IMG/VR virus record: IMGVR_UViG_3300023313_000001
Coordinates: 1-64,000 of that record
DNA length: 64,000 nt
Strand: one strand, 5' to 3'
Below, one piece after another: positions 4,173-63,942 of this stretch (positions within the stretch are counted from its first letter, which is position 1; each line of letters opens with the position of its first letter). The notes under the pieces were generated by a model. That model worked only from the letters and a program-made list of their open reading frames with translations. It was not told the origin of the DNA and did not search any database. Made by a program: the position numbers and the translations under genes.

Positions 4173-4631
4173 ATGGTTATGAGTAAAAATATCGTGTGTA
4201 TGAATTCATATTTATTGCAAGCGTGGATAGATATGATTGAAGATTTTGGATCATCCCCGTTTATTGTAATAAATCCAGATTTATCTGAACGTGAAATGGA
4301 CATACCGGTTGAATATATGCACGAAGGCTTCTTGACATTAAATGTAGCAAATGTTGCAACAGGGTATGTTATTATCGATAAAGAGACAGGATACCTATCA
4401 ATGACGGCAAGATATAATGGATTGGAAAAACAATCATTTGTACCAATAGAATCCATCGTTGTTGTTAGATCTGATTGTGGGGCAATTGCAGTAAACCTTC
4501 CCACACAACTTACCATGTTTGATGATGGGGCACCATTAACGCCATCTATACATAATCCAAAGGACCACCCTGATACCCCACAATCAACTGGTCCGACAAA
4601 ACAACCATTTATCCCAACTATAGTGAAATAA
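4173..4631 (+). CDS. sspB: ClpXP adaptor SspB-like protein
   Basis: YLLQAWIDMIED..SPFIV...IPVEY..EGFLTLNV...ARYNG matches the SspB fold; disordered tail ending PTIVK resembles the ClpX-binding tail. Confidence 0.7.
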   Translation: MVMSKNIVCMNSYLLQAWIDMIEDFGSSPFIVINPDLSEREMDIPVEYMHEGFLTLNVANVATGYVIIDKETGYLSMTARYNGLEKQSFVPIESIVVVRSDCGAIAVNLPTQLTMFDDGAPLTPSIHNPKDHPDTPQSTGPTKQPFIPTIVK

Positions 4632-4632
4632 T

Positions 4633-5022
4633 ATGATTGATGATTTAATGAAGTGGAAAGGTCGTAGAATGGTTCTAGCCAGAGATTTGAATGGAGCTGG
4701 AACATTATTTGGTGGAAGAATGTTGGAATGGATAGATGAAGAATCTGCTATATTCACTTCGTGCCAATTAAAAACACCTAGAGTAGTCACTGCCCATATG
4801 AGTGAAATTAATTTTGTATCACCTGCTTTTCAAGGTGAGATTGTAGAGATTGGATGCGAAGTAATTAAATTTGGCAAATCATCGCTCACCCTGAAATGTT
4901 ATGCCAGAAACAAACAAACACGAGCAACCATTGTTACTGTAGATAAAATGGTATTCGTTAGTGTAAATGAGCTGGGACAATCAGTTCCTCATGGAATTAG
5001 TCAACATCGAGTTTCTACATAA
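4633..5022 (+). CDS. acyl-CoA thioesterase (hotdog fold)
   Basis: DLNGAGTLFGGRMLEWIDE, VVTAHMSEINF, GKSSL. Confidence 0.85.
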   Translation: MIDDLMKWKGRRMVLARDLNGAGTLFGGRMLEWIDEESAIFTSCQLKTPRVVTAHMSEINFVSPAFQGEIVEIGCEVIKFGKSSLTLKCYARNKQTRATIVTVDKMVFVSVNELGQSVPHGISQHRVST

Positions 5023-5094
5023 CCGCTAGGTACAAGTTGCATTCCCTTGCTGGATTGAGTATAGTTAATTTTTGTAACATAGAAGGTTCACCTA

Positions 5095-6117
5095 ATGCGA
5101 TGCTTGACCCTAATCTTATTATTGATATCCATAAATGGCTGGTCCAGTGAAAAGTTGATCGTGGGGGTAACAGAAACAGCTCCCTTTGCAATGTTAAATC
5201 CCACAAATCAATGGACTGGAGTTTCCATTGATTTGTGGGAGAGTATAGCAAAAGATCTAGGAGTGGAATATCAATATGTTAGTATCCCCTTACCCAATAT
5301 ATTGACAGATCTGGAAGCTGGCAACATTGACCTAGCGGTAGGGGCAATTTCAATTACATCTGATAGAGAGTCTATACTGGATTTCTCTCACGCCTATTTT
5401 AATTCAGGGTTGGGTATCGTTACTAAAGCAACACATTCGATAACAATGTTAGACATTATTACTAACCCTAAATTTATTACATCAGTAGGGTTGTTACTTG
5501 GATTTGTTTTTTTGGGCGGGATACTTATCTTAATATTCGAGAACGGACCAGATGATAAAGACTTCAGACAGAACGACATCAGTAATGGAGTTTGGTGGTC
5601 TATTACTACAATAACTACCACAGGATATGGTGACCTCGTTCCAAAAACAAATTTAGGAAGGTTGTTTGGTGGTGTGTGGATGGTAATAGGAGCAATAATA
5701 GCTCCTATGTTAATCGGTAGTATGTCTGCTAATCTAACCCTGGATTACCAGACCAGTGTAATTGAAGATCGGAGTGATCTTTCCCATCATGCTATCGGAG
5801 TGATCTCGGGAACATCGTCTGAGATATATTTTCAAAAACACAATTTACCATACACCAAAGTAACTGATGTGAAAGCTATGATGGTATTAATTCAGCAAGA
5901 TAAGTTGGATGGGGGGGTATATGATGCTCCAATCCTCCAATATTTTTCAAAACGATACCAAAACTTAGTTGTCCTGCCTACAATATTCGATAGGCAGAGT
6001 TATGGTATTGTGGTTCAGAACGGAAGTGATTTGAGAGAATTAATCAATGCGTCTCTTTTAACCCACATCCATACACAAACTTGGTTAGATAATCTCAACC
6101 AATATTTAGGAGAGTAA
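5095..6117 (+). CDS. GluR0-like ligand-gated K+ channel (split periplasmic binding domain plus Ion_trans_2 pore)
   Basis: Signal peptide; PBP motifs APF, G.SIDLW, ISITSDRE..LDFS; pore WWSITTITTTGYGD. Confidence 0.85.
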   Translation: MRCLTLILLLISINGWSSEKLIVGVTETAPFAMLNPTNQWTGVSIDLWESIAKDLGVEYQYVSIPLPNILTDLEAGNIDLAVGAISITSDRESILDFSHAYFNSGLGIVTKATHSITMLDIITNPKFITSVGLLLGFVFLGGILILIFENGPDDKDFRQNDISNGVWWSITTITTTGYGDLVPKTNLGRLFGGVWMVIGAIIAPMLIGSMSANLTLDYQTSVIEDRSDLSHHAIGVISGTSSEIYFQKHNLPYTKVTDVKAMMVLIQQDKLDGGVYDAPILQYFSKRYQNLVVLPTIFDRQSYGIVVQNGSDLRELINASLLTHIHTQTWLDNLNQYLGE

Positions 6118-6119
6118 TA

Positions 6120-62064: not shown

Positions 62065-62074
62065 GGACAATGAC

Positions 62075-62575
62075 ATGAGATTGGCTATTATTTTATTTGT
62101 ACTCAGTTTGACTGGGTGCACCTCAACAACAACACTACACACTGGAAGCATCGTAGTAAATACACCTACGCATCAACATCAAACTTCCATGGTGTATTGG
62201 ACTACAACGGATAGACCTTTTTGGTTTGGAACAGAGTCTGGTACGATACGCTTACTAACTTCATGTAGTACCAATACTATCCAGTTTGATGAACAGCCAA
62301 ATGGCATTATTTTTAGACGAAGACAGACAGACGTTCCAGTGGTGGGTGATATACCATTGAATGGAGTATGTGGAAGAATCGAAAACGCTGATACTATTCG
62401 TGATGTTGATGATGAACTAGTATTGACACTATCCTGTCAAAACGAGTCAAATGCATTCACAGTAACCAATACAGAGTATCCTGTAGCATCAGTTAATTCA
62501 TACGTTATCCCAATCACATCAATTGAACTGACAGATGATGATAAGTTACCTACACTAGAATGCAAGTCACAATAA
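62075..62575 (+). CDS. lipoprotein
   Basis: Lipobox LTGC. Confidence 0.7.
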   Translation: MRLAIILFVLSLTGCTSTTTLHTGSIVVNTPTHQHQTSMVYWTTTDRPFWFGTESGTIRLLTSCSTNTIQFDEQPNGIIFRRRQTDVPVVGDIPLNGVCGRIENADTIRDVDDELVLTLSCQNESNAFTVTNTEYPVASVNSYVIPITSIELTDDDKLPTLECKSQ

Positions 62576-62576
62576 T

Positions 62577-63113
62577 ATGATAAAAATATGTGTGGCAGTA
62601 GATACTTCTGGTGGGTTTGCCAAAAACAATAACATCCCTTGGAATATTCCTGAAGATTTTTCTCACTTCATGAAGACTACAAAGGGGTCATATTGCATCA
62701 CTGGTAGACAATCTTATCAAGAAATGGCCAAGATTAAGCAGGAAAGAATGGGAGATAAATATGATCCTAATGCCCCCATTCTGTCAAACAGGGACACATA
62801 TGTTGTAACATCTACATTATCCAACTTAACAGATGCTACAGCAGTGACCTCTCTCTCCAGCACTATAGATCTCTTAGTAGCTAAACAGGACAAAGATATA
62901 TTCATTTTGGGTGGGGAGCAGATGTTCGTAGAGGCATTTCCGGTAGTAGATGAGGTGATCATGACAGTAGTTGATGAGTTTTACGACTGTGATCGACTGT
63001 TTCCTCTACAATATCTCACCAAGTATTTCAAACTTGTTGAAGGGACACCATTAGACACAAAAGAACATGGCCAACTCAAGATATTGAAATACGTAAGGGT
63101 ACTCCGCGGATAA
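62577..63113 (+). CDS. folA: dihydrofolate reductase
   Basis: IPWNIPEDF.HF...T, GR.SY, L.NR, IFILGG, CDRLFP. Confidence 0.9.
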   Translation: MIKICVAVDTSGGFAKNNNIPWNIPEDFSHFMKTTKGSYCITGRQSYQEMAKIKQERMGDKYDPNAPILSNRDTYVVTSTLSNLTDATAVTSLSSTIDLLVAKQDKDIFILGGEQMFVEAFPVVDEVIMTVVDEFYDCDRLFPLQYLTKYFKLVEGTPLDTKEHGQLKILKYVRVLRG

Positions 63114-63177
63114 CTCGTCCTGCTGTACCATTCCGACACTAAATACTACAATCGCCCATACTACACTTACTTTAGGA

Positions 63178-63942
63178 GTGAGACTGATGAGTTCTATTGT
63201 ACGAAATGAAGTTGAAGAAGATGAAACAGAATCTGCTTTTCAGATTACAGAAGCTGTAAATACCCAACGCATCATAAACATATATCTCAATGATACGTTA
63301 GATTCTCCACATATGTATGTAGCCGTATTGGACAAGTTTCGAACTGCATCCCCACAAGACTTGTTCTACGTATATTTGAACACACCAGGGGGATATGTTG
63401 ATACTGGTGTACAACTTATAAATGCTATGAAAGATACTAAGGCTAGAGTAATAACAGTACTTGATGGTACTGTATGTTCCATGGGCGCATTATTGTTCTT
63501 AGCTGCGGATGAATTCATTGTACATGATAATTGTAGACTGATGTTTCATAATTACAGTGGGGGGACATATGGTAAAGGTCATGAGCAAATTGCTCAGCTA
63601 GCATCATCTGTTGAATGGTATACTACCATGGTTACAGAAATATGCTTTCCATTCCTAGATGAGGACGAAATCGATAGTGTGATCTCTGGACAGGATTTAT
63701 GGTTATCCAGTGATGAAGTCAGAGAGCGGTTGGAAGTTGTAGTAGCATATGCAGAAGAAGTTCAACGGCTGTTGGATGAAGATACTGAAAAAGAGCAACA
63801 AAATGCTCGTAAAAAAGAACTATTAACTGAATTGAAAAAGATCGAAGCAAAGGAACTCCGTGCGGAGAAAAAACGACTGAAACAAGAAGAGAAGGAACGA
63901 GAGCGAGAACAAAAGAAAGCAAAAACGGAAGAGCCAAACTAA
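63178..63942 (+). CDS. clpP: ClpP-like serine protease with charged C-terminal tail
   Basis: YLNTPGG.V..G, CSMGALLFLA, LMFHNYS. Confidence 0.8.
   Translation: MRLMSSIVRNEVEEDETESAFQITEAVNTQRIINIYLNDTLDSPHMYVAVLDKFRTASPQDLFYVYLNTPGGYVDTGVQLINAMKDTKARVITVLDGTVCSMGALLFLAADEFIVHDNCRLMFHNYSGGTYGKGHEQIAQLASSVEWYTTMVTEICFPFLDEDEIDSVISGQDLWLSSDEVRERLEVVVAYAEEVQRLLDEDTEKEQQNARKKELLTELKKIEAKELRAEKKRLKQEEKEREREQKKAKTEEPN

What the first reader, a model, noticed from the sequence alone, without database searches (positions are those of the whole stretch)
4173..63942. Near-complete phage-borne ribosome-rescue and tagged-protein disposal pathway
Seen in one window: tmRNA with an AND-type tag, an SspB-like adaptor (4173), a ClpP-like protease (63178), oligopeptidase A (47401), two clear Pth2 genes plus one Pth2-like gene, YqeY, Rnl1, an HD phosphohydrolase, Ro60/Y RNAs and about 18 tRNAs. 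Established: SspB binds the N-terminal part of the ssrA tag and delivers substrates to ClpXP, and PrlC degrades the resulting peptides. Inference: a coordinated programme to keep translation alive against RNA-cleaving abortive-infection systems. SmpB and ClpX are not visible in this window.
Basis: partly seen in the sequence, partly recalled or inferred. Interest (0 to 1): 0.6.

Follow-up and report, generated by a model that had tools for sequence, protein, structure and literature searches.

The report
Huge phage carries tmRNA plus SspB adaptor
A huge uncultivated T4-like phage from a microbial mat carries a ribosome-rescue RNA (tmRNA) and a homologue of SspB, the adaptor that hands tmRNA-tagged proteins to the host ClpXP protease. 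This pairing looks new for a phage, but the other listed genes are the usual scattered translation-repair accessories of giant phages, not one pathway.

Summary
Most of the listed genes are real. The window is the first 64 kb of a 229.5-kb T4-like viral contig, estimated 65% complete. I confirmed:
- 19 tRNAs
- a well-formed two-piece tmRNA with tag (A)ANDNFFATAIAA
- an SspB-family protein
- a ClpP-fold protease
- an oligopeptidase-A-like M3 peptidase
- two Pth2
- YqeY
- T4-type Rnl1
- Ro60, with two weak Y-RNA-like elements upstream

I did not find a third Pth2 or an HD gene in the window. An HD–polynucleotide-kinase fusion lies at 184 kb of the contig. SmpB, ClpX and a CCA-adding enzyme are absent from the whole contig.

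The well-supported link is tmRNA plus SspB. The SspB homologue has the SspB fold of E. coli/Haemophilus type, a disordered linker and a conserved C-terminal xL/IxVVK tail like the ClpX-binding motif. The phage tag keeps the AAND…aromatic and xAA determinants.

SspB is conserved next to Pth2 and a CUA-anticodon tRNA in a small clade of huge phages. A relative lacks the tmRNA at the same site, so the adaptor appears older than the tmRNA. The ClpP-like gene is a known phage family that follows frd in KVP40-like phages. The "coordinated pathway" reading is only partly supported.

The parts
640..717 (+). tRNA with CUA anticodon (amber-suppressor type; ARAGORN labels it 'Pyl')
   Evidence: 60.7 bits. 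Homologous CUA tRNAs lie upstream of DUF6445-Pth2-SspB in relatives L007, L030 and L031; L012, which has Pth2 but no SspB-like gene, also carries one.
1742..2101 (+). Pth2 copy b (peptidyl-tRNA hydrolase of the archaeal/eukaryotic type)
   Evidence: PF01981 77.7 bits; NF003314 E 1.7e-19. Conserved 4-5 genes upstream of SspB in relatives.
4173..4631 (+). SspB-family adaptor: N-terminal tag-binding domain (about residues 8-115), Pro-rich disordered linker, C-terminal PFIPTIVK tail
   Evidence: The tail is conserved as xL/F-x-V/I-V/I-K at the very C-terminus across the family.
17742..18905 (+). T4 RnlA-type RNA ligase 1
   Evidence: TIGR02308 306 bits against a cut-off of 242; Pfam RNA_lig_T4_1 plus T4_Rnl1_C.
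24524..37368 (+). Region holding 17 tRNA genes, interspersed with small ORFs and homing-endonuclease-like genes
41461..41574 (+). Y-RNA-like (YrlA-like) element 1, below threshold
   Evidence: RF02553 32.9 bits against a gathering score of 69; tRNA-like T- and D-arm hairpins.
41697..41761 (+). Y-RNA-like element 2, below threshold
   Evidence: RF02553 27.5 bits. Shares the 5' motif AGAGUUACUUCU with element 1.
41841..43388 (+). Ro60 (TROVE + vWA) RNA-binding protein
   Evidence: PF05731 102 bits; PHROG 850 E 2.8e-46.
44774..45205 (+). YqeY/GatB-C-terminal-like protein
   Evidence: PF09424 56 bits; PHROG 1460 E 4.5e-35. Conserved in relative L155.
47401..49494 (+). M3A oligopeptidase-A-like zinc peptidase (HEFGH at residue 484)
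   Evidence: Nearest bacterial relatives are gammaproteobacterial OpdA at 46-48% identity. Phage relatives at 51-53% keep the M3-Cpn10 neighbourhood.
50454..50529 (+). tRNA-Cys, preceded by a promoter-like site at 50414-50442
   Evidence: Conserved in relative L155.
50655..51024 (+). Two-piece (permuted) tmRNA gene. Acceptor piece ends ...CACCUCCACCA; coding piece starts GGGGGUG; tag ORF 50895-50933; hairpin plus T-run 50975-51005
   Evidence: Absent from the syntenic site of relative L155.
51094..51399 (+). Cpn10/GroES co-chaperonin
   Evidence: PF00166 69 bits; NCBIfam GroES models.
51396..51770 (+). Pth2 copy a, overlapping the cpn10 stop by 4 nt
   Evidence: PF01981 102.8 bits; TIGR00283 87.6 bits against a cut-off of 82. 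Absent between Cpn10 and SNase in L155.
63178..63942 (+). ClpP-fold serine protease of phage family PHROG 1827, with a Glu/Lys-rich C-terminal tail. Membership of the rescue/disposal set is doubtful.

Best explanation
The window is the accessory (early-gene) arm of a huge T4-like myophage from a microbial mat. Like other giant phages, it carries a loose, scattered set of genes that keep translation running:
- many tRNAs;
- Rnl1, plus an HD-Pnk end-healing enzyme elsewhere in the genome;
- Ro60 with Y-like RNAs;
- two Pth2;
- YqeY.

Within this set there is one real mechanistic pair.
1. A complete two-piece tmRNA would be charged with Ala and, using host SmpB, would add (A)ANDNFFATAIAA to nascent chains on stalled ribosomes.
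2. A divergent SspB-family adaptor would bind the AAND...aromatic part of such tags through its N-terminal domain. Its C-terminal ...IPTIVK tail would tether them to the N-domain of host ClpX, speeding their destruction by host ClpXP.

What is shown: the identity and intactness of the RNA, the SspB fold, the linker-plus-tail architecture, and its conservation. What is inferred: tag binding, ClpX tethering, and the use of host SmpB and ClpXP.

The adaptor travels with Pth2 and a CUA tRNA across a small clade of huge phages. It appears to predate the tmRNA, which is an insertion/deletion difference at this locus, so the adaptor must also work on tags made by the host tmRNA. The ClpP-like protease and the M3 peptidase are general proteolysis and proteostasis accessories. 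Nothing ties them specifically to ssrA tags.
For: - tmRNA intact.
- SspB homology and fold. The model's tail has pLDDT of about 60.
- The C-terminal L/F-x-V/I-V/I-K is at the very end in about 20 of 22 family members despite hypervariable linkers. SspB is described as a folded domain that binds the first seven tag residues, plus a disordered tail whose end binds the ClpX N domain (PMC9963277).
- The tag keeps AAND, an aromatic residue at positions 6-7 and a C-terminal AA.
- Conserved synteny tRNA(CUA)-DUF6445-Pth2-...-SspB in contigs of 31, 90 and 323 kb at 37-63% SspB identity. The genes from Pth2b to SspB are tightly packed on one strand with no strong terminator between them.
- The phage has its own gp21-type prohead protease, so the ClpP-like gene is an accessory.
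- HD-Pnk, with a kinase domain like T4 Pnk (E 3e-6), lies at 184225-185337 and completes the Rnl1 repair pair.
Against: - No SmpB or ClpX in 229.5 kb.
- No expression data.
- The SspB-like protein is far below the curated family cut-offs.
- The test of its tail against the E. coli ClpX N-domain gave no verdict.
- The host, and therefore the host tag and host ClpX, are unknown.
- The tmRNA is missing at the syntenic site of an SspB-bearing relative's sample, and five tmRNA-bearing phages lack SspB. A functional pairing is therefore not required by either gene.
Confidence: 0.6

Rival explanations
1. Phage tmRNA tags proteins, phage SspB delivers them, the phage ClpP-like protease (with host or undiscovered phage ClpX) degrades them, and phage oligopeptidase A finishes the peptides. 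This would be a coordinated programme against RNA-cleaving abortive infection.
For: - All components exist.
- In the ClpP-like protein, Ser and His align with the ClpP catalytic residues, and a conserved Asp candidate is present.
- It is not the head protease, because a gp21-type enzyme is present.
- 35% of the genome is missing and could hold clpX or smpB.
Against: - The ClpP-like protein is far below the ClpP equivalog cut-offs and scores equally on head-maturation-protease models.
- It has a 70-residue Glu/Lys-rich tail that ClpP lacks.
- The same frd-ClpP-like arrangement occurs in the KVP40-like phage VH7D, and no GenBank phage record, that group included, gave an SspB-like match to P0001.
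- The M3 neighbourhood is conserved without a tmRNA.
- The genes are dispersed over 60 kb.
- The tmRNA is an insertion/deletion difference between relatives.
Confidence: 0.12
2. The SspB-like protein is a host-takeover adaptor or anti-adaptor that acts independently of the phage tmRNA. It could deliver particular host proteins (for example an anti-sigma or a defence protein) to ClpXP. It could occupy ClpX N-domains to block host adaptors. It could shield tagged proteins from ClpAP.
For: - SspB is conserved in relatives while the tmRNA is not.
- E. coli SspB also delivers RseA (solved structure 1yfn is among the fold hits) and blocks ClpAP recognition (PMC9963277).
- For the only previously reported phage SspB (pf16 gp18, in a phage with no tmRNA), a competitive RseA-related role was proposed (PMC5587285).
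Against: - The most conserved N-domain motifs are those shared with bacterial SspB (LN-V/I-S, ARF/Y-xG, I/V-P-x-E).
- The phage tag keeps the SspB determinants.
- This phage did gain or retain a matching tagger.
Confidence: 0.2
3. There is no functional connection at all. The listed genes are independent accessory genes that accumulated in the hyperplastic region of a giant phage, and the tmRNA is a recent, possibly neutral, capture.
For: - The tmRNA and Pth2a differ by presence or absence between relatives.
- Homing endonucleases are scattered through the region.
- Phage tmRNAs are patchy: 402 of 18,146 phage genomes carry one (PMC9004378).
Against: - The tmRNA is structurally intact, with its own promoter-like site and terminator.
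- SspB and Pth2b have stayed together through divergence down to 37% identity.
Confidence: 0.08

Closest known systems
E. coli / Haemophilus influenzae SspB (ClpXP specificity-enhancing factor)
   Same: Same fold (TM-score by target 0.73-0.85, rmsd 1.4-2.0 A). Direct sequence hits at E 1.5e-8. Same architecture: folded N-domain, disordered linker and a terminal hydrophobic-VVK-type tail.
   Different: Only 22-24% identity and below every curated family cut-off. The tail reads IPTIVK instead of LRVVK (the E. coli motif is from my own knowledge). It is phage-encoded. It is much further from the alphaproteobacterial SspB type (2qas: TM-score 0.58, rmsd 4.0 A; no BLAST similarity).
Pseudomonas phage pf16 gp18, the first reported phage SspB (PMC5587285)
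   Same: An SspB homologue in a T4-like phage; a PHROG family 'SspB-like' exists.
   Different: pf16 has no tmRNA, and its protein is close to the host's SspB. The protein here gave no tblastn match in 50,697 GenBank phage records. It represents a separate, deeply diverged lineage conserved in a clade of huge uncultivated phages.
Two-piece tmRNAs of marine T4-like myophages (Methylophilales phage Melnitz, pelagimyophages; PMC9004378)
   Same: A permuted ssrA gene in a T4-like phage that also carries a CsgG-type pore gene.
   Different: No glutamine riboswitch was detected at the tmRNA. The genome is much larger. The phage also carries SspB, which that paper does not mention (0 occurrences). 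Five other IMG/VR phages with permuted tmRNAs lack SspB.
Jumbo-phage RNA-repair and ribosome-rescue gene repertoire (Iyer et al. 2021, PMC7824862)
   Same: tRNA arrays, Rnl1, polynucleotide kinase/phosphoesterase, TROVE with a tRNA-like partner, PTH2, patchy ClpP and PhoH. All are present here.
   Different: That survey reports ClpS adaptors but does not mention SspB (0 occurrences).
ClpP-like 'ATP-dependent protease' of KVP40-like vibriophages (PHROG 1827)
   Same: 37% identity, the same position directly after frd, the same Ser/His/Asp candidates and the same charged tail.
   Different: None of note. This is an ordinary member of that phage family.

Membership tests
SspB (ClpXP specificity-enhancing factor) | SspB substrate-binding domain fold | tested here: met
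   phmmer against PDB: ten SspB chains, E 1.5e-8 to 3.6e-6. The AF2 model (pLDDT 87) matches 1ou8/1ox9/8et3 with TM-score by target 0.80-0.85.
SspB (ClpXP specificity-enhancing factor) | Score above curated family cut-offs | tested here: not met
   Pfam PF04386 17.6 bits against 27. Best NCBIfam model 50.2 bits against 162.
SspB (ClpXP specificity-enhancing factor) | Disordered linker ending in a short C-terminal ClpX N-domain-binding motif | tested here: inconclusive
   The motif xL/F-x-V/I-V/I-K is conserved at the C-terminus behind variable linkers, and the tail has low pLDDT. The binding test against the E. coli ClpX N-domain gave no verdict.
SspB (ClpXP specificity-enhancing factor) | Binds the N-terminal part of the ssrA tag and stimulates ClpXP degradation | not testable with these tools
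   Needs biochemistry. Only the shared N-domain motifs and the retained AAND...aromatic tag determinants could be observed.
Two-piece (permuted) tmRNA | Covariance-model score above gathering | tested here: met
   RF04321 114.6 bits against 47; RF01849 71.4 against 50. RF01850 scores 77.1 against 84, which is not met.
Two-piece (permuted) tmRNA | tRNA-like domain with G3-U70, T-arm and CCA; tag ORF with a GCN resume codon and a stop | tested here: met
   GGGGGUG / CACCUCC-ACCA; GGGUUCGAAUCCC; GCA...GCG UAA at 50895-50933.
Two-piece (permuted) tmRNA | SmpB partner available | tested here: not met
   No SmpB in the 229.5-kb contig. Host SmpB is presumed, and 35% of the genome is missing.
ClpP (peptidase S14) | Clp protease domain; Ser and His of the triad | tested here: met
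   PF00574 63.9 bits against 20.2. Ser in GTVCSMGA and His in MFHNY align with ClpP. The Asp candidate in QDLWL is conserved with VH7D.
ClpP (peptidase S14) | Equivalog-level similarity to bacterial ClpP | tested here: not met
   TIGR00493 46.2 bits against 308.6; NF001368 51.8 against 249. Head-maturation-protease models score the same or higher, at 56.6-58.1.
ClpP (peptidase S14) | Cognate AAA+ partner (ClpX/ClpA) encoded or shown to bind | tested here: not met
   No ClpX in the contig. Binding was not tested.
Oligopeptidase A (M3A) | Peptidase_M3 plus TOP_N domains and an HExxH zinc site | tested here: met
   446.5 and 55.8 bits; HEFGH at residue 484.
Oligopeptidase A (M3A) | Equivalog cut-off of the OpdA model | tested here: not met
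   NF008159 731.6 bits against 927. It is still the best model by far (Dcp 341).
Pth2 (peptidyl-tRNA hydrolase 2) | PTH2 domain above cut-off | tested here: met
   PF01981 102.8 and 77.7 bits against 23. TIGR00283 87.6 (met) and 63.7 (not met) against 82.
Ro60-Y RNA RNP | TROVE protein with an adjacent Y RNA | tested here: inconclusive
   TROVE 102 bits against 23. The two adjacent YrlA-like matches reach only 32.9 and 27.5 bits against 69.
T4 Rnl1 / Pnkp tRNA repair | RnlA-family ligase plus an end-healing kinase/phosphatase | tested here: met
   TIGR02308 306 bits against 242. An HD (19.7 bits, below 22) plus AAA_33 kinase (52 bits) fusion lies at contig 184225-185337; its kinase resembles T4 Pnk 1ly1, E 3.2e-6.

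The most novel reading that the evidence does not exclude
In this clade of huge phages, the conserved trio of amber-suppressor-type tRNA(CUA), Pth2 and SspB works as an offensive host-shutoff and recycling device. Read-through of host UAG stops, together with mRNA decay, would drive ribosomes to mRNA ends. The products would be ssrA-tagged, by the host tmRNA in most members and by the phage's own tmRNA here. The phage SspB would funnel them into host ClpXP, and the phage oligopeptidase would finish them into amino acids for phage synthesis. 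The phage would thus turn the host's quality-control route into a nutrient pipeline rather than merely defending its own translation.
Probability: 0.07. Interest if true: 0.75.

Novelty: new variant of a known kind. Interest (0 to 1): 0.45.

Why it matters
Phage tmRNAs are known, but their purpose is unsettled. Proposals include rescuing ribosomes and tagging host proteins for recycling. A phage that also brings the tag-specific adaptor argues that what matters is the fate of the tagged proteins, meaning fast ClpXP degradation, and not ribosome release alone.

The SspB lineage found here is conserved with its ClpX-tethering-type tail across huge phages whose SspB proteins share only 37-63% identity. 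That gives a directly testable case of a virus hijacking a host AAA+ protease through an adaptor. It parallels the ClpS adaptors noted in other jumbo phages.

The practical limits are serious. The phage is uncultivated, its host is unknown, about a third of the genome is missing, and there are no expression data.

Tried and rejected
- Megablast of 47401-52000 against GenBank phages: no match.
- tblastn of the SspB-like protein against 50,697 phage records: none.
- Pattern scans of IMG/VR and of JGI metagenomes for SspB relatives: none. A looser alignment found one distant (27%) IMG/VR hit, with no tmRNA in that 75-kb fragment.
- Complex prediction, SspB tail (residues 100-152) against two copies of the E. 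coli ClpX N-domain: score 0.07, no verdict. This counts neither for nor against binding.
- Host search by tag-coding pattern in 185,579 species genomes: two hits. One is a MAG tmRNA with tag ANDNFFASNDNGELVAAAAAA, but its tmRNA sequence is not close and its SspB is of the alpha type. No host could be inferred.
- Host class stays ambiguous. The tmRNA scores similarly on the alpha (71 bits) and beta (77 bits) two-piece models. SspB and OpdA are of the gamma/beta type. The nearest topoisomerase hits are Rhizobiales phages at only about 34% identity.
- Expression: the only holder is one DNA run from a microbial mat. The sample's RNA run (5 million letters) holds none of the sequence.
- TAG recoding as the reason for the CUA tRNA: rejected. 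Coding density is 93% under code 11 and TAG makes up 19% of stops. Same-frame neighbouring ORFs are not clearly enriched for TAG separators: 9 of 30. No alternative genetic code was used anywhere.
- Searching whole records of the ENA/Logan relatives for a tmRNA was not possible, because those records are not held.
- ClpP-like as the head-maturation protease: rejected. A gp21-type S77 protease lies at contig 153638-154126, and the gene sits among DNA-metabolism genes.

Full report
**What the window is.** The window is the first 64 kb of a 229,507-bp IMG/VR viral contig. The contig is linear, 38.5% G+C, and CheckV estimates it at 65% complete. The only public run that holds it is a microbial-mat metagenome. 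Gene content marks a T4-like phage: gp30.3, Rnl1, topoisomerase II subunits, primase, NrdB, td, frd, PhoH, and a gp21-type prohead protease further along. The nearest isolates by topoisomerase are T4-like phages of Rhizobiales, at only about 34% identity. Nearly all window genes are on the + strand and coding density is 93% under the standard bacterial code.

**Checking the list.** These items are real.
- There are 19 tRNAs.
- A two-piece tmRNA lies at 50655-51024. Rfam tmRNA_permuted scores 114.6 bits against a gathering score of 47. The alpha model scores 71.4 bits and the beta model 77.1.
- The tmRNA sequence has every expected part:
  - acceptor strands GGGGGUG / CACCUCC-ACCA, giving a G3-U70 pair;
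  - a T-arm, GGGUUCGAAUCCC;
  - a GCA resume codon;
  - the frame ANDNFFATAIAA-stop at 50895-50933;
  - a hairpin with a T-run at 50975-51005.
- A promoter-like site lies just upstream of the preceding tRNA-Cys.
- The M3 peptidase (47401-49494) scores 731.6 bits on the oligopeptidase A model, against 341 on Dcp. It has HEFGH at residue 484.
- The two Pth2 genes are at 51396-51770 and 1742-2101.
- YqeY is at 44774-45205.
- The T4-type Rnl1 is at 17742-18905.
- Ro60/TROVE is at 41841-43388.
- The 700-nt gap upstream of Ro60 holds two YrlA-like matches of 32.9 and 27.5 bits against a gathering score of 69. They share a 5' motif and tRNA-like hairpins. They are plausible but below threshold.

A third Pth2-like gene does not exist in the contig. 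No HD phosphohydrolase was found in the window. This rests on Pfam scans of 67 window ORFs and on an HD search of the whole contig.

- SmpB, ClpX and a CCA-adding enzyme are absent from the whole contig.
- A polynucleotide kinase is present. A 370-aa protein at contig 184225-185337 joins an N-terminal HD domain to a P-loop kinase. The kinase is similar to T4 Pnk (1ly1, E 3.2e-6).
- I read this as an HD-Pnk-type end-healing partner for Rnl1. That architecture is known to me from Shuman-lab work, which I did not check here.

**The SspB-like protein.** Pfam alone is unconvincing: 17.6 bits, below the 27-bit cut-off. Other evidence settles the homology.
- Ten solved SspB chains from H. influenzae and E. 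coli match at E 1.5e-8 to 3.6e-6.
- Eight NCBIfam SspB models match at E down to 2.4e-13.
- PHROG 8945 'SspB-like' matches at E 3e-10.
- An AlphaFold2 model (pLDDT 87) superposes on SspB structures with TM-score by target 0.73-0.85 and rmsd 1.4-2.0 A. The Caulobacter alpha-type SspB is a much poorer match: TM-score 0.58, rmsd 4.0 A.
- There is no BLAST similarity to an alphaproteobacterial MAG's SspB.

Residues 121-152 are predicted disordered. They end in PFIPTIVK.

The exhaustive profile search found 115 cluster representatives, 17 of them at E <= 1e-10. In an alignment of 22 of these, about 20 end in xL/F-x-V/I-V/I-K at the very C-terminus, behind linkers of unrelated sequence and length. 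This matches the published SspB design: a folded domain that binds the first seven tag residues, and a disordered tail whose end binds the ClpX N domain (PMC9963277). From my own knowledge, the E. coli motif is LRVVK.

The full phage tag would be AANDNFFATAIAA. It keeps AAND, aromatic residues at positions 6-7 and a terminal AA, which I recall to be the SspB and ClpX determinants of the E. coli tag. A direct test of the tail against the E. coli ClpX N-domain gave no verdict.

**How the adaptor and the tagger are distributed.** The SspB-like gene is very rare in viral collections.
- It gave no tblastn hit in 50,697 GenBank phage records.
- In IMG/VR only one distant relative turned up.
- Pattern scans of JGI metagenomes found none.

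It is nevertheless conserved in a small clade of huge T4-like phages. Contigs of 31 kb, 90 kb and 322,781 bp carry SspB at 63%, 37% and 37% identity. All share the block tRNA-Gly x2 - tRNA(CUA) - DUF6445 - Pth2 - three to five small ORFs - SspB - ... - glutamate-receptor-like channel - gp30.3 - Rnl1. In the window, the genes from Pth2b to SspB are packed on one strand with gaps of at most 50 nt.

The tmRNA is not conserved in the same way. A 13-kb contig comes from the same sample as the 90-kb SspB-bearing contig. It reproduces the window's order PRPP synthase - YqeY - AAA_28 - C93 peptidase - M3 - tRNA-Cys - small ORF - Cpn10 - SNase. It has neither the tmRNA nor Pth2a, and the alignment shows a clean gap of about 300 nt.

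In the other direction, five IMG/VR records have true permuted tmRNAs of 92-150 bits, two of them from complete genomes. None carries an SspB-like gene, and the positive controls for that search did match. The adaptor is therefore older than the tmRNA in this lineage. Neither gene needs the other, and their co-occurrence here is unusual.

**The ClpP-like and M3 genes.** The ClpP-like protein has the Clp fold, and Ser and His align with ClpP's catalytic residues. An Asp candidate is conserved with its vibriophage homologue. Several points argue against a true ClpP.
- It scores 46-52 bits on ClpP equivalogs whose cut-offs are 249-359, and it scores as well on head-maturation-protease models.
- It carries a 70-residue Glu/Lys-rich tail.
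- It belongs to PHROG 1827 (188 bits).
- It lies directly after frd, exactly as in the KVP40-like phage VH7D.

Iyer et al. 2021 already list patchy ClpP genes in jumbo phages as probable anti-host peptidases.

The M3 peptidase is closest to gammaproteobacterial OpdA at 46-48% identity. It is rare in phages. In this clade it stays next to a C93 cysteine peptidase and Cpn10, whether or not a tmRNA is present. Both genes look like general proteolysis or proteostasis accessories. Nothing ties them to ssrA tags.

**What is already known.**
- Two-piece tmRNAs in T4-like marine phages that also carry CsgG-type pores are described (PMC9004378). The window has a CsgG-SPOR gene too.
- One phage SspB has been reported: pf16 gp18, in a phage without a tmRNA (PMC5587285).
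- The 'RNA repair/ribosome rescue' reading of tRNAs, Rnl, Pnk, TROVE and PTH2 in jumbo phages is published (PMC7824862).
- What I did not find described is a phage carrying both its own tmRNA and its own SspB, or this conserved phage SspB lineage.

**Verdict.** There is a credible tagger-plus-adaptor pair that would feed host ClpXP, set within a known type of scattered translation-maintenance repertoire. It is not a near-complete, coordinated phage pathway. Function, host and expression remain untested.

Noticed in passing
window 640-717; L007 2813-2889; L030 6232-6308; L031 4562-4638; L012 4662-4736: A tRNA with a CUA (amber-suppressor) anticodon is conserved in this phage and at least four related contigs. 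In the three relatives that carry SspB it lies just upstream of the DUF6445-Pth2-SspB block. Crude tests gave no sign of TAG recoding in the 229-kb contig. Its amino-acid identity is unknown.
   Followed up: partly
window 5095-6117: A glutamate-receptor-like ligand-gated ion channel: solute-binding domain SBP_bac_3/Lig_chan split by a K+-channel pore. It is phage-encoded and conserved in the relatives L007, L009 and L030.
   Followed up: no
window 10352-12136: A CsgG-like pore protein with a C-terminal SPOR domain, preceded by a small ORF. It resembles the curli-pore genes reported in pelagimyophages and phage Melnitz.
   Followed up: partly
G000:C1 184225-185337 (outside the window): A 370-aa fusion of an N-terminal HD domain and a T4-Pnk-like kinase. 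It is a likely HD-Pnk RNA end-healing enzyme that would partner Rnl1, and it sits next to a terminase-nuclease-domain ORF.
   Followed up: partly
G000:C1 70288-70767 (L005 8289-8768): An Acb1 anti-CBASS phosphodiesterase homologue (107.5 bits), lying between the topoisomerase II subunit genes.
   Followed up: no
window 38264-41137: PTPS/QueD-like, GTP cyclohydrolase I and nucleoside 2-deoxyribosyltransferase-like genes lie together. This suggests 7-deazaguanine or another nucleotide-modification chemistry.
   Followed up: no
window 50580-50705: A small hydrophobic ORF of 41 codons lies between tRNA-Cys and the tmRNA. A similar ORF sits after tRNA-Cys in relative L155, marking the left edge of the tmRNA insertion/deletion.
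   Followed up: partly
L155 1896-3145 (relative, sample SRR7589087): The relative carries a Thg1-like tRNA-His guanylyltransferase and an RNase T-like gene between PRPP synthase and YqeY. No ORF in the matching window stretch (44464-44774) has room for them. The RNA-repair set therefore varies between relatives.
   Followed up: no
window 16299-17684, 23261-23965, 25726-26649, 54103-54699; L005 7145-8272: Several homing-endonuclease-like ORFs (DUF723/T5orf172, DUF559, HNH) are scattered among the accessory genes and the tRNA region. This fits a hyperplastic, mobile-element-rich arm.
   Followed up: no
window 30314-30385: A possible twentieth tRNA-like element (Rfam tRNA 27.2 bits, just under the gathering score of 29), not called by ARAGORN.
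   Followed up: no
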